A stretch of 64,000 bases of DNA from Glycera tridactyla (taxonomy: Eukaryota), in contig OZ286472.1 of NCBI GenBank assembly GCA_965644265.1, positions 53,382,001 through 53,446,000 of the forward strand. The letters run 5' to 3'. The notes beneath the pieces are model-generated. The model was not told the DNA's origin, did not search any database, and saw only the letters and a list, made by a program, of their open reading frames with translations. Positions 21,474 to 42,203 of the stretch are shown piece by piece. Positions within the stretch are counted from its first letter, which is position 1, and each line of letters opens with the position of its first letter. Position numbers and translations under genes: made by a program.

Positions 21474-23475
21474 TATGTCTGAACCACTGAGTTTTCTGAA
21501 ATTCTCCATGATGATGGTGATCACGATTTTTCATGTGCACATCTTGGAGGTCATCAGAACTATTGATGTCTACAGTGTGCACTGTCAATCAGCAAAAATG
21601 ATTGAAATTACTAGGTTTTTGCTGAACTCCAGAACATAGGTATGAGTTCCAGAGTGCAAATCTCAAAATTCCAGTATTTTTCCAGAACAATAAAGTGAAA
21701 AACATGTTTTCCACAACATTTCAGGTATAGGTAATGAATTCCAGAACATTTCCAGAGTCTGTGCAAACCCTGAGGCAGGAGGCAGAAAGAGTGTATTTGA
21801 TAGCAATATCGTACATAGGAAATTCTATAAAAATGTCTCTTGAACGCAATGTTGATCCCTCCTTTTAAGAATAGACCTGATACATGGGATGGAATCAAAC
21901 ATCCAAGAATTGAAGCATGGGGAGACCATTGCCATCATTACATTTTTGTGCAGGAGCAATGAAACAAAAGATTGCACACAAACAATGGAAAAGAAAATGT
22001 GAAATCCTTGTCAAAATAGAGAGCAAGTCAGTGGGGTGAACCATGAAAACGAAGACTGAAAGACATCCACACATTTATTGAGTCAACCTGAGTGTGATTT
22101 CTGGTACTTTCAACAGTCAAGTGCTAACAACCAGTTGTTAAAATTAAGAGTGTAGAGAGATCTCAGGGAACACAGTAGAGGGGTCACTAATTGTAGCTGA
22201 TGATTCTTTGAAATAGATCAAGAAACCGATCATTGATTACAGATCTAGTGAAATCTGTGACGAGTGATTGCCCTAAATGTGAACAAAAAGTGCTATAAGA
22301 AAACGGAGGCATGGTATGACAGAGAAGTGACATGGAACTTTCGGCTTAATGCCAAAATAATTCACTTGTCCACACCCAATGATTCAGAGAAACCTGCGAT
22401 GAGAGACCACATTAAATGACACCGAAATATAGTTTCAGAGGTGGTCTCTTATCTGAGGTACAGTATACGTCAAATAAAAAAGCTGCCCCAGGGAAGCGTT
22501 CTCTTGTCAAAGGTGGACTTTCATCACAAATTCAAACAAAATAGTAATCCTGAGAAATTGATCTATTGAAGGTGGTGTTTTTAGAGGTCTCTTACACATT
22601 TCACTGTATCTGGCTACATGGGTATCAACACATAACAGGATGGGAGGAGGCAGATGAAAAAAAGGTGGGAAAAAATAAGATGCAAATGAATCACATCACA
22701 CCAACAAGATATTCATCCAAAAGAATATACACAGAAGTATACATCCCACGATGAAACAATTTTGCAACTTCAGTGAAGAAAGAACGGAAAGCTCGTCAAA
22801 TCTCAACAGAGGATCCAATTAGGAAAATCTCCCAATAAGAAAATGGAAAAACAAATTTGAGGGATGAGTCCCGGATTTAGTTGGCTGGAACCAATCAGCC
22901 GACAGTGCAATATCACAGAATTCAGTCAAAACATGAGTTGAACACTAATTCATGGATACTCAATCTGACCACCATACCAGTTGATAATACTGGAAGATCA
23001 AGTCCACATCAGCAGAATCCTTGTAAACAGCCCCTGTGATGGGCAAGCACCATACATTCTTCACAACTTTGTCTCAAGAGAGATGCATGCAAGTCACGGC
23101 TGTATTTGTAAAGGTATGACGAGAGAATGTTCTTGAAAGAAAGCTTGATTATCACAGGTACAGTAATTTCCACTATTTTTGTGACCCTCGTTTTTTTGTG
23201 ATCTTATCGGCCAGAACGTGAACATGGCTCATTATTTAGAGTGAAGGACATGTGCTATCAACTTTCGCTACTGTTGGTCATATACACAGCCGTCATCATA
23301 TAGAGCTCTGTGAAGACTGCAGACTGTACTTATTAATACTGGCGACATTACCTTCAAAGCACGACTTCCAACCATACACAATGTAACCAGTGTAGGGGAT
23401 TCTTCATATGTGAGGAATCACAATTGCGTCATCAAAGGAAAGTGTTCTCACACAGAGCGACTTGTGTCTTTCTTA

Positions 23476-24477
23476 GGGCTATTCCATTTATTAAGGAGTG
23501 GGGGGGCCGGTCTGGAACCGAAATGAAAAAGCGGGGGTGGGGGGGTCTCTGAAAAATCGAAAGCGGGGGTGGGGGGGGGGGGGGTCTCAGAAAAATCGAA
23601 AGCGGGGGCGATATTAGGTGAAAATCGAAAGCGGGGGGCGATATTAGGGGAAAATCCGGAAGCGGGGGTTGGTGATGATCGGAAAAATTGGGAAGCGGGG
23701 GAGAGGCGGAAATCAGAACTTTCGTGTTGAAAACCGACCAAAAACACCAAATCCGGCGACTATTAGTCAATATATTGCCGTCTCTTCGACGTGGCTCGTG
23801 TTCGTCATGGGCGCCGCCATCTTGGTTATCAAATCCAAGTCGGCAAACCGTGACATTTTTTCGATGGGCACATGAATAATGCGATAAAATGCCCGCAAAA
23901 TGGCGGATCCTCTTGTAAATGGCGATTAAGTGACAGAAAAATGTCCAAAATCGAAAAATGCGATGAATATCAACGAAAGGAACCGAAAATAATTTGTCAC
24001 GCTGGCGGCCACGTCTTCTGTGTATCACAGGCGCTGGCGGATTCGGCCGCCATCTACCGGCGGAACCCGGAGTTGTCGACGCGAAACACGAGATGGCGGG
24101 TCGAATTATTCGAGAAACACGTGTTCGGCACGCAGACCGCCATCTTGAATGCAAGCACGATTCTAGCGCGATTTTTTTCATTAATCATGGATTCTTGGGA
24201 TAAAACGCTGACAGATTCCAGATCATCCTTGTAAATTGCGATTGATCATCAGAATAATGTCAATTATCATGAAATTTGACGTATTTGTCATCTCAGCCTC
24301 GTTTTCGGGAAGCGGGGGGGGGGGGGGGGGGGGTGTCGCTTTCGGAAACCAGCGGCGAAAAATTAAAAAGCGGGGGTGGGGGAGGGTCAGAATAATCAAA
24401 AAGCAGGGGTGGGGGGGGGGGTGTAATTTTTTTTGGCTGACCGGCCCCCCCCCCACCCTTTTTAAATGGAATAGCCC
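23476..24477. mobile_element. PIF/Harbinger-type MITE (~1 kb)
   Basis: TTA|GGGCTATTCCATTTA ... TAAATGGAATAGCCC|TTA; perfect 15-bp TIR and 3-bp TSD; subterminal AAAATCGAAAGCGGGGG tandem repeats. Confidence 0.9.
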
Positions 24478-25678
24478 TTAGCCGATGATAGAATCATGGT
24501 CTTAAATACATCGGCTCTCAAAATATCTCCCGATAAACAAGAGTCACAAGAAGAGTGGAATCAACTGTGATTGCCCATTGCAGGCTTCCTCATTAAGGGT
24601 TTCACTCGAGGTGGACACCAGCATCCAAATCTGATGAATCATCATCGCACATGTATGGTTCAATGAAAGTGAAAAAGGACAAGCCATTGGTTACTTTCAT
24701 TTTTGAGAAATACATAAACCAAAACTGAGGTGTTCATCTTTTATTTTGACCCACAAACAAAGGCCCAAAATAAGGAATGAATGGAACGAAGTCTACCTCT
24801 ATAATTTCACTGTATGTCATCTACTCATCAATGACATAGTTCCACACAATGCTTCGAAAATTTTTTGTGATTTCACAAGATGTTTGAAAATCTATACACT
24901 GGTCCACTTAAGTGTATCAGAAATGCCAACCTTTTAATTCGAGTAATGATCAAATAAGATGAGTTGGCTGCCTCAAAGTAATGATACGTGTAGAATGCCA
25001 AAATGTAATGAATCATTACTCCAAAATTGTAATGGTTGGCATCACTGGAGAATTTACAAAAAACTTACCTCAAGACATCAACAAATTCTCCTTTTTTCCA
25101 CATACTTGCCCTCAGGTTAATTCATTCAAAATAATTTAAATATCAATGCCGTCTAGCTTGCCATTCAAGTTCAAGGTGACAATCGGATACTGTTTCAAAT
25201 TCAGGGGTATCCAGAATTCTGGGGTGAAAAATTTGCCAATACTCTGAATTCTAGAGTAGGAAACCCCTGCAAAGTATCGGGGGTGTCTCAGAGGTGTACC
25301 AAATAACTGAAAATATGGGATGGGGTGAGAAATTCTCCTCATTGGTCTCCTGCCCTATTGTCAAATGGGATAGCCCTTACAAAAGATGTGACAAATAATT
25401 TGTAGGTCTACATCTATACCAAACTGAAATTTCAATTTTCATACTTTTTCTTCATAGCTGGAAAAAGATATGCTTGAATTCCATTTTCATTCTTCATCTC
25501 TGCAAACCCCTTTTTTATACTGCTCGATCACCAGTTGTCTTCCTGAACATTAGATAAGAATCCAGCCATAAAACAACCTGAGGGCAAATATATGGATAAG
25601 ATCCGGTCGTCTTGTGACCCAGATATCAATGACCTTGACCCCCACTGTTAGTAACAGAATAATAGGCGACAATCTTAC

Positions 25679-33823: not shown

Positions 33824-34423
33824 TGTTACGCGCCAACGGCCGATCAGCGCAATCGGCCTATAGCGCTGCGCCAACGGCGGACCGCTTGTTGGCACCATGA
33901 TCGATCGATCGCGGAACAATCAATGGATGGCAAGCCAATTGACATATTTCATTCGCTAAATACATTGAGATATGAAGAAAACTAAATTCCCCATCGATTG
34001 GATGACCAACGTTTTGATTTCAATGTATTTATGACGTTAAATCTTGGCCGGAAGTGGGCGATATCGGATGTAAACAATTGCCGCCATCTTGTTTTTTCAC
34101 TCGCCGATCTCTCACTTTGATGCTGGATATTTCAGCAGCTGCTCAATATACAGCAAAAGCAAAATATGGGGTACTATAGGCATGAGCTATAAGATTATTT
34201 GTTCGAAGTTTCATAATTTTCCAATGTGTTTATCCTCTCCAAATACGAGTGCAAAGTTACCATTCACGGCAAACTTTCGTAATTGTGCCATGCTATGTGC
34301 GCCAAACCTCCTGCACGGCTGTCGATAGCGCAGCGCCATCGACCGATTCCTGCGCCAACAAGCGATCGGCCGTTGGCGCAGCGCCATCGGCCGATCGCGC
34401 AGATCCGTCGATGGCGCGTAACA
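33824..34423. mobile_element. Ginger-like (TGT...ACA) MITE, 4-bp TSD
   Basis: GTAA|TGTTACGCGCCAACGGCCGATC ... GATCCGTCGATGGCGCGTAACA|GTAA; ~35-bp imperfect TIR. Confidence 0.7.
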
Positions 34424-34611
34424 GTAATAATCGCTAGAATGATCATCCAAGAATTTCCAAAAGTTTTCCGATAATCAACTGATAATCAGAAAACCGCCGC
34501 TGTTACGACTTGTCCCGGAGATAGGCGGGGTACGAGCAGTCTCGGTTACAAGCTGTCCGACATTCGGAACTGACTGTATGGGTGTGTCATCAGGTCGCGG
34601 ACGTCTCCATT

Positions 34612-35495
34612 GGGCTACGTAGCTTATTTGGAGGGCGTTAGCCAATTAACGGACGCCTCGCAATTGACGGACGCTTAAAAAACCACAGATTCTCGCCATT
34701 ATATGTGGACTTTCATTAAAAATCCCACACAAACTGATGAAAGGCATAATAACCATCAAACGTGAGAAGTTTGGAGGTGATCGGCCACGTTTCCGATCGC
34801 TGGTGACGAATTTTCTGAGTAACAATGATCCCGAATCTCAACCTTCCTCCAGTTTATCCTCGACGCGCAAAATTGAGAAAGCCGTCGCAACGAGATTTTC
34901 CTCATGTACAAAGAAAACAAAATTCCCCAACGATTGTATGTATTACATTTTGAATCCTATGTATTACTTTTTTTATATCGTGGCCGAAAGTCGGCGATAT
35001 CGGATGTAAACAATCGCCGCCATCTTGGTTTTTCACTCGCCGACTTCCCAACTTTGAAGCTGGATATCTCAGCGACTAGCCAATATAGAATGAAACCGAA
35101 TACAGGATTCTAAAAAGGAGAGTTGGGAGATGACTCGCTCGAAGTTTCATTTTTTTTCAACGAGTTTATCCCCTCCAAATACGAGTGCCAAGTAACGACT
35201 TCACGGCAAACTTTCGCCATTGCGAATCACGCGCTCCCGCCACTCCTTGGTGGTGACACCTGGCGGCGATCACCCGTTATGGATTCCCACACAGAACGCC
35301 GCCATTTGCCGTTATTTCTTCTCTAAATCCAAACAAACTATGGTTTTCTGACATATTAGTATGGTTACTGGTGATACTTTGACTATTTATGGCCGTATAT
35401 CGCTAATATTCGTAATTTTCCGAAATCGTGATGACGTCATCGGAAAACCCCCGTCCGTCAAATTACTAGCGCCCTCCAATTAAGCTACGTAGCCC
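34612..35495. mobile_element. PIF/Harbinger-type MITE, 3-bp TSD, nested in a TIR
   Basis: ATT|GGGCTACGTAGCTTATTTGGAGGGCG ... CGCCCTCCAATTAAGCTACGTAGCCC|ATT. Confidence 0.82.
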
Positions 35496-36774
35496 ATTTC
35501 AGATAGCTAGTTTGGTCAATTTTCATATTTCATCAATGCTTCCTCTTATTGAACCCATCTTATGGTACATACTGTAAGAATTCTAACAAAGAAAAGATGA
35601 TGAAAATCGGTTCAACGGTTTCCGCGTTATTGCAGTTTTACTCATGCTAATTTCCACATTTCGTGAGAACCTGAAACATGTTGCTCAGGCAAGCGTACAA
35701 AACTGGTCAAGAACCCATCTTCAAACCTTCACTGTGTAGATAATAATGCATTTAGAGATGATTCTCAAGGCAAATCTTTTTCTTCTCAACACAGACTTGA
35801 GAAGATTGAACGGAAACTTGGTGTGGATCAAGCCGTAGAGAGAATAATTGACTTCAAAACTAGGTTTTTGTTCACTTTGACCAAGTGGACTTTGTCATTT
35901 TCAGGATCCGGCATGCCAAAGGGCTGAAAATGTACTTTTTTCCCAATATCTTCATGAATAAAGGTGATAGAGACTTCATTTTTCCTTCAAATTGAAGATC
36001 CTCCAGAGGAGTATTTGCAGAGTGAGAATTAGGAACAGTTATCCTAGGTGATCATCAGCAAAAAATTCACAAAATTAAATTTTCAACGGCAAGAATGTAA
36101 CATACAGGAGCATCATACATGTACATGTATATGTATATTTTTCCTTTGAACCTTGGGCATGATGAGCAAAGAAAATCTATTTTGTTATCTAAAAAACGAA
36201 GATTATGAGAAGCAATCATTTTCAAAATTAAAAAATTTAATATTCAAAATTTCATTTCAATGATTTGACTATGTGAGAGGCTGGGAATGTACATTCCTTC
36301 TGCTCCATTCACATCTTGATGGGTACTTTTGCAATATTACAAGAAGCAATCATGTTCAAAATTCAAAAGATTGAAATTTGAAATTTGAAATTTTGAAATT
36401 TGAAATTCGAAATTAAAAAATTTGAAATTCAAGATTTGAAAATTTGGGATTAAAAATTAAAAAATTTATTTTAGTGATTTGAACCCCACACGTGGATTTC
36501 AATATTTCAAAGGTGATCGATTGTCATCCAAGTGAGCAGATGTCAAGGCTCAGCCCACCATCTGAATACCTGATCACAGGCTCTCCTAATTGCAATTGAC
36601 TTCTGCTCACTTCCCACCCCCCCCCCCCCCTTACCCCTTCCCCGCTCATTGCTCAACACTTCCCATCACACACTCTCATGCACAATAATATTGTATTGGC
36701 CATGAATATTGTTCTCCAAAAACATGAGAAAGAGAGGAATGCTGAAAAATGATGATTGCCACAAATTTACACTC

Positions 36775-37331
36775 GTTGCAAAATATTGACTTTGAGCATG
36801 AAAAAAATGATGAAAATTGTATAAAATTAGGCATCCCGTGTTTTGAATAAAGTCATTTTGTTTACATAATGAGTAACTTTTTGCAACATTTTAGGTGGGA
36901 GAATGAAGAATAATAGGTATATCCTCGATACAAGTTTACTTTTGTTGCAAAATATTGACTTTGAGCATGAAAAAAATGATGAAAATTGTATAAAATTAGG
37001 CATCCTGTTTTTTGAAAAAAGTCATTTTTTTCACATTATGATTCACTTTTTGCAACATTTCAGGTGGGAGAATGATGAATTATAGGTATATCCTTGATAC
37101 AAATTTACTTTTGTTGCAAAATATTTACTTTGAGCATGAAAAAATGATGAAAATTGTATAAAATTAGGCATCCCGTTTTTTGAATAAAGTCATTTTTTTT
37201 TTCATAATGAGTGACTTTTTGCAACATTTTAGGTGGGAGAATGAAGAATAATAGATATATCCTCGATACAAATTCACTTTTGTTGCAAAATATTGACTTT
37301 GAGCATGAAAAAATAATGAAAATTGTATAAA
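36775..37331. repeat. 169-bp tandem repeat, ~3.3 units
   Basis: GTTGCAAAATATT(G/T)ACTTTGAGCATG recurs at 36775, 36944, 37113 and 37282. Confidence 0.95.
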
Positions 37332-37662
37332 GTTCATTTCAACTCTCAGTCAAGTATAGCTCTGCTCATACTGGCCCGATCTGTGATAAACAAAAAGCAC
37401 AAGAAAATTCAGGAAAAACATGACAAACTGTGAAAATGTGAAGTTTCTATCCCTACTGGCTCAGTGCGGAAATAGCTACCAAATCGGAGGTGTCAACATA
37501 GCATGCTTTCTGAGATATGATCGACGGCGAGCGGAGCATCTGCTGGACTGCTAATGCAACACTTGACAAGCTGTAAGCAGTCTCTCCCATCTACAACCAC
37601 TTTTTCAAAGTGCAAACCCGCAGTGAGCCACTCCACTTACAAAGGTGATCTATATACCAATG

Positions 37663-38429
37663 CAGGGTGTTAGCCAGCCAGCCAAAACAGGGTGTCCAAA
37701 TATTTCCCAAAGCCAGAAAAATAGCGCGGACGACATTTTCTGAAAATGAGAAAAATAACGCGGACGGGTAGTTTCAGCATGCCCTGAAATAATATTACAA
37801 TTCTTTCCTGGATATCTTATATTGATTTATAAATGACCTTCATTCAACTTAGTTTTCCTATCACAGGAGTTATTGCTAGCTGTCTCTTAGTCAGTTTCAA
37901 AATTTGAGCTTCACTTGAAGACAGGAAATATCTGAAATGCTGCAATTCATCATCAAGCACTGGTCTTGATCCATTATATGAATCTGTTCTGTTATAGAAC
38001 ACAATTTTATATTCTAAAGTTGAATCTTGACTGTAGTAATGCCAATAAACCAATCAGGCTTTATAGTGGCAGTGATGTAATCAAGCATTTTAGGCAATGA
38101 AAACAGATCAGATTATTTGTGAGCAGGCTATCAGGTAGCAGTATGATTACCTCAATGAGGTTGGGATGACCACTGGCTCGACCCTCCACAAAGTTTGAGG
38201 TGGAAGGTAATGAGCACTGACTAATTAGGCAGGGATTAACTGTCTTGTGTTTGATTACCAAATTTGATGCTCTGGAGAGCAACTGGTATTGTTTGTAGTA
38301 CTATTGTCATAGTATTGACTAAGGGGATTGATGGACGCCCTACTGGGCACCCTGTTGATTTAAGAGGCCGTCCAATATCAAGATAGGGGGTCCAAATGAC
38401 GGCTGGACGTATGGCTGGCTAACACCCTG
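37663..38429. mobile_element. hAT-type MITE, 8-bp TSD
   Basis: TACCAATG|CAGGGTGTTAGCCAGCC ... GGCTGGCTAACACCCTG|TACCAATG; perfect 17-bp TIR and TSD. Confidence 0.93.
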
Positions 38430-39184
38430 TACCAATGGATTCATCATGAACTGAGGTTTCAAGTGCAAATTGTCTATTCAGGGGTTAATAAGACGATATT
38501 TCGAGTAAAATGGGTTTGAAATTTATTTCGACATTCACTCGAATGTATCTCCACTCCTACTCGTCAGATCGACTTTGTACAAGTAGCCCAGGAAAATTTA
38601 GGAAATGGAGGACAAACTGTGAAAGTATGAACTTTCTATGCCTACTGGCTCAGTGCGGAAATGGCCATTAAATCGGAGGTGTCAACATCGTGTTCACGGC
38701 GGATTTTTCAGTAGCACTCAGCTCGCTGAGCATGAGTGAACAAATCAAGATGGCTGTGTTCACATCTGCGCCATATCGTCGGTTCTTCACCAAATCCTTC
38801 TCAACTTTGGAATGGAATAGAGAAGGAGTTCGTGCATCTGTCCTCCAATTCTGAGCGAAAAATATTGGAAACTTTCTGAGATATGATCAGGGGAAGCTCG
38901 AAATCTCGGCTCGGCGCTCTCGGCGAGCATGATTCGCATGGCGAGCGGAGCAGGGGCCGGACTAGCTATTTCAGACGTTGTCCGCGACCTGGTCATACCC
39001 TGGATTCCAGGCTTGAAGAAAGCGGGGGGTTGTGTTTGGGGTCTGATTTGGTCGATGAGGCATACGAGGGACTAAGGGACAGAGATTCCCCCATGATCCC
39101 AGGCCATGATCTCATTGAATGGCTCCCATCGTACCTGCATGATTACATGGCAATTTCTGACACATGACACGAGCAACCTGTCAG

Positions 39185-40127
39185 CAGGTCGCGGACGACG
39201 TCCGTATTGGCCAACGTTGGCCAATTGAGCAGCGTTGGCCAATTGACGGACGGGAAATACCCTGATCACGTGACCGCGCTAAAAATAGATTTCGATAAAA
39301 TCGCGAATATTCGCAAATAGCAGCCATAAACTGATGACTACTCCAACTTCCATCAACAAACATCATCTTTTGTTGAAGAGCGATCGTTTTCATTGACTTT
39401 GAGATGCAAAAAGCGGCATTCTGAGCGAGAATCCATTGCCCGGCGATCTCCGCCAGATGTTAACAACATGGGATGGCAGGAGCATGTCATTCGCCATGGC
39501 AAAAGTTTGCCGTAAAATCGTAACTTTGCACTCGTATTTGGAGTTGATATACATCTTGAAAAATTATGAAACTTTGATCGGGACATCTCCTACCCATGTT
39601 CCTTACACCCCCATGGTCGCTTTTGCTGTAAGACATGCGGTTGGTGAAATATCCAGCATCAAAGTTGTGAAGTCGGCGAGTGAAAAACAAGATGGCGGCG
39701 ATTGTTCACATCCGAAACCGCCGACTTTCGGCCACAATATCAGAAAATGAGGACATAGGATTCGAAATGTAGTACATACAATCGATGGGAAATTTTGTTT
39801 TCTTTATACATACGAAAAATCTCATTGCGCCGGCTTTCTCAATTTTGCGCGCAGAGGAATTACCGCAGGAAGGTTGAGATTCGGGATCGTTGTCACTTAG
39901 AAAATTCGTCACCAGCGCTCAGAAACGAGACCCGTATCCTCGAAACTTCTCATGTTCAAAGATTATCATACATTCTATTTGATGGTGTACGCTTTTGAGT
40001 GAAAATTTACTTCTAATGGCGAGAATATGTGCTTTCTCAAGCGTCCGTTAATTGGCAGACGTTGGTCAATTGGCCAACGCTGCTCAATTGGCAAGCGTTG
40101 GCCAATTTGGACGTCGTCCGCGACCTG
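39185..40127. mobile_element. CAGG-ended MITE, 5-bp TSD
   Basis: GTCAG|CAGGTCGCGGACGACGTCC ... GGACGTCGTCCGCGACCTG|GTCAG; 70-85 bp TIR built of TTGGCCAA repeats. Confidence 0.9.
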
Positions 40128-41062
40128 GTCAGTGTCACGGTCGATCCAGTTCCGGGGAGTGGCAAACTGCGGTCGGCAAAAACTATCTCAGAACGCGATA
40201 TTCCCAACAATTATATCGATCAGAACCAGCCTATGGAAGCTAGAGATACTTGCCATTTTGTCGGTTCTTGATTTATAGGCGCACCAGGATTCAACAGTGT
40301 TCAAAACGGTAATTAAACAGAATAAATACGGGATCGCCTACCACACAACCGGATTCCTGAGTACTACGTCACGGAAAATGGGGCACTTCTAGTTCTCCTT
40401 ATTGACGCGCAGGGGCGCTAGGCGAGCGTATTCGAGATCGATCATTGTGTTTCCCCGAGTGCGCTAGATTTAGTCATTCAAGAGCGGTTTGTTTGATTGT
40501 TTGTTTGAGTTTAACATCACTTAAACCAGCATGGGTTATATCGGACTGAAAAAAAAACCTGAAAATGCTGAAGAATAGAGTCACTGGCCTGCCGGGGGCC
40601 GTCCACACTCTTTGCGAAAGAATGTCCCGAGTGTCATGTACGTTGAGAGCGTATGCGTCAAGTAGCTAGGTCACGGGGACACACGAGTGGCCTCGCCACG
40701 AGACGCATACGCTCTCAACGTACACAACACGAGAAATATTCTGTATTTATCATCCGGTTATTGGATAGAAGAATGTATTACGTTAAATTTGCCATTTAGA
40801 TTGTGAAAAACGGACCAGCAGTTCATGAGCTACAGCGATTTTTCTAGAGGCATCTTTCCCAGTTAGTCCCGTGACGCTATACACAAATTGAATGCGCGAC
40901 ACTGCCAGTTGACCCTTGACCTCGATTGTTCTATGGTTACATGACGCGCAATGTAACCTCAAAAATTACACAATCCATACGTACATGCATGCTGCGCAGC
41001 GATTACATGCACGCTACAAGCGGCATCGGATGATAAAGCAGTGGATCTTTAACGTGTGTCAA

Positions 41063-41735
41063 CAGGTCAGGCTCCGCACATAGATTTACGTGCCGAGATA
41101 TTTCTAGTTCCTCCTCCGGTGTAACGTAGTGCAAGCGGACACGTTTTTCTTTGTATCGCGGTTGTCAGCATAAACTGATGGGCGTACTGTGTGAACAAGC
41201 GGGCGCTGCCGGATTCGGCCCTCCATCTACCGGCGAACCCTGGAGTTGTAGACGCAAAACACAAGATGGCGGGTCGAAATACGCTCAAAATTCGGACATG
41301 CTGATCTAAATCCTCATTTGCTCAAAAATGGCACATAGGATCGAAAATCGGCACATGGAATCGATAGAAAACAACCTAATGTACATATAGTCACATTGAA
41401 TACAACCGCCAGACTAATAGCAACAATTGTGCAGGGGTTGGAAGGTCTAGTTTCAGCCAGTTTGTTTACCTCTGCTTGACTTTGAACCCTACTCACTTCG
41501 CACAGGTGAGAGGAATCGGTATCGTTTTGATCTAGTGGACAGGGGACGAGCATGAATAAATTATAAATCAACTAATCAGAAGTGGCGTTATAAATCATAC
41601 TTGGAGAGAGGACGAAATGTAACACGAATTTGAATTGGCCGGACCCACTTCCGGTTCCTGATTTCGGCACGTAAATTTACGTGCCGCACATATTTTTACG
41701 CGCGGCACGTATTTTTACGCGTGGAGCCTGGCCTG
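41063..41735. mobile_element. CAGG-ended MITE, 5-bp TSD
   Basis: GTCAA|CAGGTCAGGCTCCGCAC..TTTACGTGCCG ... CGGCACGTATTTTTACGCGTGGAGCCTGGCCTG|GTCAA. Confidence 0.85.
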
Positions 41736-42203
41736 GTCAAGGAAGAGATTCCTATCAACACAGCCCGCCTTTGATATCCCAGTCGGCGTGCACTGGGCTC
41801 AGAATAGCCAACTTAAGAGAAGGCCGGTGGCGACATCCAGCGGCAGCGGATGCGTTTCTAACAAGACAAACAAACGACCACGCCATATTGAACCGTATTC
41901 ATTGCCATCGAGAGTCACTTCAAATTTTAGGTTTTCATATTCAATTCGATATACATGCATATACAAATATGAATATGGAAACTGTCATCACCATGGTAGT
42001 GGGCAAGGTTGCAGCTGTCGCAACCACCATCGTCTGCATGATAAGTTTAAGAAGCCTTTTATGAAAAGATTGAAAGTACATGTATATTCCAGAATATCGT
42101 GATATGAATTGTCCTTCAGTGATTACAAAGTCCCATCAGTGTGTGTGTGTGGGAGGGAGGGGGGTGTTGGCTGGGTGGATGGATGACTACCATTATTGTT
42201 TTA

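What the first reader, a model, noticed from the sequence alone, without database searches (positions are those of the whole stretch)
34586..41740. Sequence-specific insertion: three CAGG-ended elements all duplicate GTCAN
Seen: TSDs are GTCAT (34591 element), GTCAG (39185) and GTCAA (41063). Each is preceded by T, all read the same way on the plus strand, and all lie within 7 kb, although sizes (4.4, 0.94, 0.67 kb) and sub-terminal sequences differ. Other 5-bp-TSD elements here (TTAAT, GAAAT) do not share it. Inference: an undescribed or poorly described cut-and-paste lineage with a non-palindromic TGTCAN target preference, which would be of interest for targeted integration.
Basis: partly seen in the sequence, partly recalled or inferred. 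Interest (0 to 1): 0.72.

Follow-up and report, generated by a model that had tools for sequence, protein, structure and literature searches.

The report
MITEs inserting at palindromic nTnAn sites
The three elements are old, non-coding cut-and-paste transposons (MITEs) whose families insert at a symmetric nTnAn site (best GTNAC) and duplicate 5 bp, most likely hAT-type elements of the described hAT5 kind; the shared "GTCAN" is a small-sample accident.

Summary
Three CAGG…CCTG elements sit at 34591-38991, 39185-40127 and 41063-41735, with exact 5-bp duplications GTCAT, GTCAG and GTCAA.

- The CAGGTCGCGGAC family has 1526 exact termini in this 2.04-Gb animal genome. Of these, 72.8% are flanked by TNAN (8.7% expected by chance), 16.9% by the perfect palindrome GTNAC, and 5.8% by GTCAN.
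- In 30 complete copies, T at position 2 is 30/30, A at position 4 is 26/30, position 1 is mostly G and position 5 mostly C. The centre is unconstrained (C 8/30). The base before the duplication is T in only 11/30.
- The second family (CAGGYCAGGCTCC, element 3) shows the same nTnAn bias: 51 of 100 listed termini.

The target is therefore two-fold symmetric, as expected for a transposase pair cutting with a 5-bp stagger. It parallels the hAT rule nTnnnnAn. CAG ends, short inverted repeats, subterminal repeats and a 5-bp duplication fit the described hAT5 group.

I found no autonomous copy, so superfamily membership is inferred. A different hAT family in the same genome (792-aa transposase) does make 5-bp duplications.

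Earlier notes of this scan had already recorded 5-bp and 6-bp hAT elements on other DNA of this genome. Verdict: an ordinary new member of a known kind.

The parts
34586..34590 (.). Left copy of the 5-bp target-site duplication GTCAT of element 1
34591..35503 (-). Element 1, left part. It is a MITE of the CAGGTCGCGGAC family (the variant whose ends continue ...ACAACGTCTC), inverted relative to element 2. About 929 bp once the nested insert is removed.
   Evidence: (78% identity to element 2, reverse orientation)
35504..38968 (.). Nested 3465-bp insertion inside element 1. Ends TAGCTAGT...ACTAGCTA with a 7/8-bp duplication (A)TTTCAGA. It holds tandem ~170-bp repeats and a further 767-bp CAGGG-ended MITE at 37663-38429 (8-bp duplication TACCAATG). 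It is not part of the 5-bp family.
   Evidence: (I23)
38969..38991 (-). Element 1, right end: the second copy of the nested element's duplication, then the terminal inverted repeat ...GTCCGCGACCTG
38992..38996 (.). Right copy of the duplication GTCAT of element 1
39180..39184 (.). Left copy of the duplication GTCAG of element 2
39185..40127 (+). Element 2: a complete 943-bp MITE of the CAGGTCGCGGAC family (variant with ...ACGACGTCC ends). 68-nt inverted terminal regions (91% complementary) hold repeated TTGGCCAA/GACGG motifs. No long ORF.
   Evidence: I5, I11
40128..40132 (.). Right copy of the duplication GTCAG of element 2
41058..41062 (.). Left copy of the duplication GTCAA of element 3
41063..41735 (+). 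Element 3: a complete 673-bp MITE of a second family (ends CAGGTCAGGCTCC / CAGGCCAGGCTCC), with 232 termini genome-wide
41736..41740 (.). Right copy of the duplication GTCAA of element 3

Best explanation
The three elements are old non-autonomous cut-and-paste DNA transposons (MITEs) of two families. Both families have CAGG...CCTG ends, short terminal inverted repeats and subterminal repeat motifs. A transposase supplied in trans excised and reinserted them. It attacked the two target strands 5 bp apart, and gap repair produced the 5-bp duplication. Each of the two active sites prefers the same half-site on its own strand: 5'-(G)T just inside the cut. On one strand this reads as the two-fold symmetric consensus nTnAn, with GTNAC as the optimum and a free centre. 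GTCAT, GTCAG and GTCAA are three ordinary draws from this distribution; each has a perfect left half-site (GT) and only the A of the right one. The shared central C, the common strand and the preceding T are coincidence. The families most probably belong to the hAT superfamily, in the hAT5 group, which is defined by 5-bp duplications. Their target rule is the 5-bp counterpart of the hAT rule nTnnnnAn. Shown here: the element boundaries, the 5-bp duplication, the genome-wide target logo and its symmetry, the lack of coding capacity, and the age of the copies. Inferred: the half-site mechanism and the hAT5 membership.
For: - Abundance: the end CAGGTCGCGGAC occurs 762+764 times against 16+18 for the reversed control.
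- Complete copies: 30 inverted-repeat pairs all have exact 5-bp duplications (28 if one tandem array is counted once). T2 is 30/30, A4 26/30, G1 14/30 (C 1/30), C5 20/30. The centre is A10 C8 G3 T9.
- Genome-wide flanks: TNAN 1111/1526 = 72.8% against 8.7% expected. GTNAC 258 = 16.9%. GTCAN 88 = 5.8%, against about 105 expected from the family's own logo.
- Hand tally of the first 100 TNAN termini: centre C/G 37 and A/T 63; the base next to the end is C 51, A 22, T 20, G 7.
- Symmetry: the logo oriented by element is symmetric, G1 15/26 and C5 13/26. Elements 1 and 2 are mutually inverted.
- Second family: 17/17 exact 5-bp duplications, T2 13/17, A4 15/17. In 100 listed termini, TNAN is 51, T at -4 is 68, A at -2 is 74 and GTCAN is 5 (tallied by hand).
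- The outer bases are duplicated even when they are not complementary (ATAAA, TTCAC, GTAAG), so the duplication is 5 bp and not 3.
- No long ORF was found, and all long copies are MITEs with nested inserts.
- Copies are 86-97% alike, so they are old.
- hAT context: Hermes prefers nTnnnnAn (PMC10368747). hAT5, with 5-bp duplications, is a described group (PMC12730594). A resident hAT family with a 792-aa transposase (zf-C17orf113 and Dimer_Tnp_hAT domains) makes 5-bp duplications in 13 of 15 informative pairs, plus one autonomous copy.
Against: - No autonomous copy with these ends was found, so no transposase is tied to the elements.
- The fifth base of the ends is T or C, not the G of the usual hAT motif YARNG.
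- The one verified 5-bp hAT family in this genome shows no nTnAn bias, so the rule is not general for 5-bp hAT elements.
- All five close relatives of that family that I tested make 6-bp duplications.
- Counts use exact 12-13-nt ends only, and listings are capped at 100 places, so the logos come from well-preserved ends. The hand tallies come from the first chromosomes listed.
Confidence: 0.72

Rival explanations
1. One reading: a lineage whose transposase recognises the asymmetric word T-GTCA-N and inserts next to it in one orientation.
For: Three of three local elements carry GTCAN on the same strand, each after a T. GTCAN is about 16 times more frequent beside the ends than base composition predicts, 88 against 5.6.
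Against: - Only 5.8% of termini carry GTCAN.
- That number is no higher than predicted from independent G1, T2 and A4 preferences (about 105).
- GTNAC is three times commoner (258).
- The centre is unconstrained, and T at -1 is 11/30.
- The logo is symmetric after orienting by element.
- Elements 1 and 2 are inverted relative to each other, yet their duplications read the same way.
Confidence: 0.03
2. The elements belong to a superfamily other than hAT that also gives CA...TG ends and short duplications. This could be a Transib/Chapaev-type (CMCT) lineage or an undescribed one, with nTnAn as its own target rule.
For: The CMCT clade is described as having 5'-CA..TG-3' ends and 2-5-bp duplications (PMC12730594). 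Transib makes 5-bp duplications (my own knowledge). No hAT transposase could be linked to these ends. The ends lack the G at position 5 of the usual hAT motif.
Against: - The ends start CAG, not the CAC that is usual for the CMCT/Transib heptamer (my own knowledge).
- T at the second and A at the penultimate position is the hAT signature.
- Subterminal short repeats and 12-20-nt inverted repeats are typical of hAT MITEs.
- hAT elements with 5- and 6-bp duplications are abundant in this genome.
- The 12-nt end matches 9 of 12 bases of the subterminal motif CAGGCCGCGGGA shared by the resident 6-bp hAT families. This is weak evidence.
Confidence: 0.2
3. GTCA, or part of it, is a fixed part of the element ends, or the true duplication is the 3-bp TNA (PIF/Harbinger-like) flanked by element bases.
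For: In the commonest class, GTNAC, the outer G and C are complementary and could be read as an extension of the inverted repeat.
Against: The outer bases are copied directly even when they are not complementary (ATAAA, GTTTT, TTCAC, TTGAT, GTAAG, GTGAT, ATAAT; likewise). The flanks of the three window elements do not extend the inverted repeat. The centre is C/G in 37% of termini, not the W of TWA.
Confidence: 0.01

Closest known systems
hAT5 group of the hAT superfamily (hAT elements with 5-bp target-site duplications; Kapitonov & Jurka 2007, Repbase Reports 7:1188, as cited in PMC12730594)
   Same: Cut-and-paste structure, ends beginning CAG...CTG, short terminal inverted repeats with subterminal repeat motifs, exact 5-bp duplications, animal host, and MITE derivatives in hundreds of copies.
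   Different: No transposase gene is linked to these ends. The fifth base of the end is T or C rather than G. The strong nTnAn/GTNAC preference is not shared by the one transposase-encoding 5-bp hAT family checked in this genome (ends CAGAGACTGACATTTTG).
Ac/hobo/Hermes-type hAT elements (8-bp duplication, target nTnnnnAn)
   Same: The same half-site logic: T at the second and A at the penultimate position of the duplication, so two-fold symmetric target choice. CAG ends.
   Different: The stagger is 5 bp instead of 8 bp. There is an added G1/C5 preference.
Transib / CMCT clade (5'-CA..TG-3' ends, 2-5-bp duplications)
   Same: 5-bp duplication and CA...TG ends.
   Different: The ends are CAGG, not the CAC heptamer. 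The core of the target is A/T-anchored. No RAG1-like gene was examined or linked.
PIF/Harbinger (3-bp TWA duplication)
   Same: The central T-N-A of the target resembles TWA.
   Different: 5 bp are duplicated, including the outer bases. The centre is not restricted to A/T. The ends differ. A true PIF-like element with a TTA duplication lies at about 23474-24479 in the same window, for comparison.

Membership tests
hAT5 (hAT superfamily) | Target-site duplication of exactly 5 bp | tested here: met
   30/30 complete copies of family 1 and 17/17 of family 2 have exact 5-bp direct repeats and no 6th matching base.
hAT5 (hAT superfamily) | Element encodes, or is mobilised by, a hAT transposase (RNase-H-like DDE core with C-terminal dimerisation domain PF05699) | tested here: inconclusive
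   No autonomous copy was found among about 450 listed termini. The long copies L020, L028, L071, L074, L075, L076 and L091 are MITEs with nested inserts. Two co-locations with hAT genes proved to be juxtapositions: a 6-bp hAT nested beside a MITE, and a truncated mini-MITE end abutting a 5'-truncated hAT copy.
hAT5 (hAT superfamily) | Ends of the YARNG type (CAG/TAG...CTG/CTA) with short terminal inverted repeats | tested here: inconclusive
   CAG...CTG and 12-20-nt inverted repeats are present. The fifth base is T or C instead of G. Resident hAT families read CAGAG, CAGTG or CAGGG.
hAT5 (hAT superfamily) | Two-fold symmetric target with T at the second and A at the penultimate position (Ac-type hAT rule nTnnnnAn) | tested here: met
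   T2 30/30 and A4 26/30. TNAN at 72.8% of 1526 termini and 51% in family 2. The rule itself is from PMC10368747.
Transib / CMCT clade | CAC-type heptamer ends and a RAG1-like transposase | tested here: not met
   The ends are CAGGTCG or CAGGYCA, with no CAC. The transposase could not be tested because no autonomous copy was found. The heptamer rule is from my own knowledge.
PIF/Harbinger | 3-bp TWA duplication | tested here: not met
   Five bases are duplicated, including non-complementary outer bases. The centre is C/G in 37% of termini.
MITE (non-autonomous DNA transposon) | Short (<1 kb), non-coding, inverted-repeat-bounded, flanked by a duplication, high copy number | tested here: met
   Lengths are 917-955 bp and 622-704 bp. 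There are 1526 and 232 termini. No long ORFs.

The most novel reading that the evidence does not exclude
The two MITE families were mobilised by a still unidentified transposase that is distinct from the resident 5-bp hAT family (which shows little target bias) and from the 6-bp families. This transposase would combine a 5-bp stagger with an unusually strict Ac-type half-site (T2 in all 30 sampled copies, optimum GTNAC). If it is a separate hAT branch or a new lineage, this genome would hold 5-, 6- and 8-bp hAT relatives side by side. That set could be compared to learn what fixes stagger length and half-site reading.
Probability: 0.25. Interest if true: 0.4.

Novelty: new member of a known kind. 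Interest (0 to 1): 0.2.

Why it matters
It matters little for targeted integration. The preference is a short, degenerate, symmetric motif (nTnAn) of the kind most DDE transposases show, not an asymmetric address. The useful points are modest:
- A clean genome-wide target logo for a 5-bp-duplicating CAG-ended family, showing that the hAT T/A half-site rule survives when the stagger shrinks from 8 to 5 bp.
- The observation that one animal genome carries hAT relatives making 5-, 6- and 8-bp duplications with different target strictness.
- A caution that three neighbouring insertions are too few to infer a target motif.

Tried and rejected
Search for an autonomous copy of family 1:
- I fetched every long inverted-repeat pair I could see: L020 (3.5 kb), L028 (2.7 kb), L022, L019, L071 (3.2 kb) and L074 (5.5 kb). 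All are MITEs with nested MITEs, satellites or other inserts.

Search for an autonomous copy of family 2:
- L075 (3.6 kb) holds a nested IS1595/Merlin-like ORF. L076 (4.4 kb) has no ORF. L091 (5.5 kb) holds an expanded satellite.

Cross-referencing ends with hAT genes:
- I compared the places of 149 hAT dimerisation-domain matches and 64 transposase matches with all listed ends. Two co-locations turned up.
- C26:49.30 Mb is a 720-aa hAT with its own CAGTG ends and a 6-bp duplication, lying beside a MITE end.
- C26:20.537 Mb is a 123-bp foldback remnant of a MITE end lacking its last 21 bp, joined to a 5'-truncated copy of an 830-aa hAT family. The four intact copies of that family share sequence only from the junction inward.
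- Gap patterns linking the MITE end to that gene matched only the C26 copy. Part of this is uninformative, because my anchor word is not exact in the intact copies.
- The matching right end with duplication ATTAT is absent near C26.

Other checks:
- Scanning 30 hAT loci for the 12-nt end with up to 2 mismatches gave nothing convincing.
- HMMER against 1.8 billion representative proteins gave relatives at 54% identity or less. Their contigs were too short to show element ends, or, in the one long record (NCBI assembly GCA_902652985.1), showed a 6-bp duplication.
- No sequencing run was listed for this genome.
- Earlier findings searched by sequence gave nothing.

Limits reached:
- I did not use long N-runs in patterns to read them out.
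Full report
**What is there.**
The window is G000:C34:53382001-53446000 of a 2.04-Gb, 207-contig animal genome.
- Element 1 is 34591-38991, flanked by GTCAT.
- Element 2 is 39185-40127, flanked by GTCAG.
- Element 3 is 41063-41735, flanked by GTCAA.

Elements 1 and 2 have the exact 12-nt end CAGGTCGCGGAC on both sides. Element 3 has CAGGTCAGGCTCC at one end and CAGGCCAGGCTCC at the other. The flanking 5-mers are direct repeats and do not extend the inverted repeats, so they are target-site duplications and not element sequence. An unbiased scan of the whole window for a 5-bp duplication plus an inverted repeat (at least 12 of 14 matching) returns just these three CAGG elements.

**Element 1 is not a large element.**
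BLAST within the window shows that 34591-35309 is 78% identical to element 2 in reverse orientation. A 3465-bp insertion at 35504-38968 interrupts it near one end. That insertion has ends TAGCTAGT...ACTAGCTA and a 7/8-bp duplication (A)TTTCAGA. It contains tandem repeats and a further 767-bp CAGGG-ended MITE at 37663-38429, with an 8-bp duplication TACCAATG. Without the insert, element 1 is about 929 bp, the normal size for its family. Elements 1 and 2 are therefore two copies of one family in opposite orientations, yet their duplications read the same way on the plus strand. That already argues against a target orientation coupled to the element.

**Genome-wide test, family 1.**
- CAGGTCGCGGAC occurs 762+764 times, against 16+18 for the reversed control. 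That corresponds to about 760 elements, mostly 917-955 bp.
- I fetched 40 stretches. Thirty inverted-repeat pairs all have exact 5-bp duplications (28 if one tandem array, L005, is counted once).

| Position | Counts in 30 copies |
|---|---|
| 1 | G14 A8 T7 C1 |
| 2 | T30 |
| 3 | A10 C8 G3 T9 |
| 4 | A26 |
| 5 | C20 T6 A2 G2 |
| Base before the duplication | T 11/30 |

- Whole-genome counts of flank-specific patterns agree. TNAN flanks 1111/1526 termini (72.8%; 8.7% expected from base composition).
- The perfect palindrome GTNAC flanks 258 termini (16.9%).
- GTCAN flanks 88 termini (5.8%). This is sixteen-fold above random sequence. It is no more than the roughly 105 expected from the independent G1, T2 and A4 preferences.
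- A hand tally of the first 100 TNAN termini listed gives C/G 37 and A/T 63 at the centre. The base next to the end is C 51, A 22, T 20, G 7.
- After orienting 26 copies by their internal sequence, the logo stays symmetric: G1 15 and C5 13.
- Non-palindromic 5-mers such as ATAAA, TTCAC and GTAAG are duplicated exactly, so the duplication is 5 bp and not a 3-bp TNA.

**Family 2 (element 3).**
- It has 232 termini, against 10 for the control.
- Seventeen complete copies all have exact 5-bp duplications. T2 is 13/17, A4 is 15/17, and GTCAN occurs in 2/17 including the window copy.
- In 100 listed termini with visible flanks, I tallied by hand TNAN 51, T at -4 68, A at -2 74 and GTCAN 5.
- A second, independent family therefore shows the same, somewhat weaker, nTnAn rule.

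**Reading.**
The target is two-fold symmetric. Each half reads 5'-(G)T just inside the cut on its own strand. This is what a pair of identical active sites cutting 5 bp apart would give. It is the 5-bp version of the hAT rule nTnnnnAn (Hermes; PMC10368747). The three window insertions each have a full left half-site (GT) and only the A of the right one. Their common central C and common strand are chance. Using the family frequencies, the chance that two further insertions repeat GTCAN on the same strand is about 0.5%. That is unremarkable for a scan that looks at very many windows.

**Nature and age.**
The elements have no long ORFs. Their ends carry repeated TTGGCCAA/GACGG-type motifs. Copies are 86-97% identical pairwise. 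They are old MITEs, not recently active elements.

**Superfamily.**
Features pointing to hAT:
- CAG...CTG ends, short inverted repeats, subterminal repeats, a 5-bp duplication and the T2/A(n-1) target point to hAT, specifically the described hAT5 group. PMC12730594 cites Kapitonov & Jurka 2007 and places hAT5 and hAT6 in an animal, Blackjack-related lineage.

I tried hard to find the autonomous partner and failed:
- All long copies are MITEs with nested inserts.
- Two places where an end lies next to a hAT gene are juxtapositions. At C26:49.30 Mb, a 720-aa hAT with its own CAGTG ends and a 6-bp duplication lies beside a MITE end.
- At C26:20.537 Mb, a 123-bp foldback remnant of a MITE end that lacks its last 21 bp abuts a 5'-truncated copy of an 830-aa hAT family (FAM200/ZBED5-like by its relatives). 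The four intact copies of that family share sequence only from the junction inward.

**What the genome does contain.**
- It has at least 149 hAT dimerisation-domain matches.
- By aligning two copies of each family, I determined ends and duplications for six related families.
- Five make 6-bp duplications. These are the 720-aa, 827-aa, 760-aa, a second 720-aa, and 746-aa families. A 734-aa family probably does too.
- One makes 5-bp duplications. It has a 792-aa transposase with zf-C17orf113 and Dimer_Tnp_hAT domains, ends CAGAGACTGACATTTTG, and at least 465 termini. The 5-bp duplication is seen in 13 of 15 informative pairs and in one autonomous copy (GTATC).
- hAT transposases with a 5-bp stagger therefore do exist here. 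But that family shows no nTnAn bias and has unrelated ends, so it is not the mobiliser of elements 1-3.
- The 6-bp families share a subterminal motif CAGGCCGCGGGA right after their 12-nt ends. It matches the MITE end at 9 of 12 positions. This is a weak hint of kinship and nothing more.

**Rivals.**
- A non-hAT lineage (the CMCT/Transib type also has CA..TG ends and 2-5-bp duplications) cannot be excluded without a transposase. It fits worse, because the ends are CAG rather than CAC and the target rule is of hAT type.
- The idea that GTCA or the outer bases belong to the element is refuted by the direct repeats of non-palindromic 5-mers.

**Limits.**
- Counts rest on exact 12-13-nt ends.
- Listings show only the first 100 places.
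- Three tallies were made by hand from those listings.
No sequencing run was listed.
- Earlier first-stage notes of this scan had already recorded hAT elements with 5-bp and 6-bp duplications elsewhere in this genome. I used them as leads and checked the general point independently.

**Verdict.**
The target preference is real, but it is symmetric and of a known type. The lineage is most likely the already described hAT5 kind. Interest is low.

Noticed in passing
window:35504-38968: A 3465-bp element is nested in element 1. Its ends are TAGCTAGT...ACTAGCTA with a 7/8-bp duplication (A)TTTCAGA. It has ~170-bp tandem repeats around 36780-37330 and no obvious transposase.
   Followed up: partly
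window:37663-38429: A 767-bp MITE with perfect 18-nt inverted repeats CAGGGTGTTAGCCAGCCA and an 8-bp duplication TACCAATG. It is a classical 8-bp hAT-type MITE, nested two levels deep.
   Followed up: partly
window:33816-34431: A third carrier of the ~300-bp internal core shared by elements 1 and 2 (core at 33971-34279, 77-78% identity). It has quite different ~98-nt inverted ends (GTTACGCGCCAACGGCCGATC...). The same end type flanks a MITE in L074. How one core came to sit between different ends is unexplained.
   Followed up: partly
window:28481-28939: A 459-bp CAGG-ended element (CAGGGTTCCTGC / CAGGCTTCCCGC) with the 5-bp duplication GAAAT. It is a further 5-bp family and does not follow T2.
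   Followed up: no
window:23474-24479: A ~1-kb element with perfect ends GGGCTATTCCATTTA and a TTA duplication, which looks PIF/Harbinger-like. It shares 78 bp (90%) with the interior of element 3 (24030-24105).
   Followed up: no
L096+L108+L109 (G000:C39:87920600-87929950) and L097+L106+L107: A ~7.7-kb autonomous hAT element with an intact 792-aa ORF, ends CAGAGACTGACATTTTG, a long 5' tandem-repeat array and a 5-bp duplication (GTATC). At least 8 intact ORF copies and at least 465 termini exist genome-wide. Most MITE-size pairs have 5-bp duplications; two have 6 bp.
   Followed up: partly
L073:1600-4454, L092:798-3986, L094/L095, L100/L101, L098+L105 / L099+L104: Five related hAT families (720, 827, 760, 720 and 746 aa) all make 6-bp duplications: CGGAGG, GTGAAG, CTGGGA, CATGGT, CTTCAC, CTCATG, CAGGCA, TACAGT. 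The 746-aa family's end CAGGGATATTCCTGGA has about 1100 near-exact termini, so it is a large MITE family.
   Followed up: partly
L111 (G000:C26:20535495-20538512): A foldback remnant of a family-1 MITE end (123 bp, flank ATTAT) is joined directly to the 5' region of a decayed 830-aa hAT gene. Four intact 824-830-aa copies lie at C17:35.54, C34:24.38, C31:95.89 and C10:46.23 Mb. Their ends were not read.
   Followed up: partly
L075:2280-3400: An ORF with an IS1595/Merlin-like motif (...IDESKFGK...) is nested inside a family-2 MITE copy.
   Followed up: no
L113:4697-8487 (NCBI GCA_902652985.1, LR736855.1): A relative (43% identity over the N-terminal fragment) in another animal assembly is a 3.8-kb hAT element. 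It has perfect 14-nt ends CAGACCTGCCAACC and a 6-bp duplication TATTCA.
   Followed up: partly
L040 (G000:C1:63657000-63661473): Family-1 ends recur every 1660 bp with the identical flank TTTAG, so a MITE has been carried along in a tandem duplication array.
   Followed up: no
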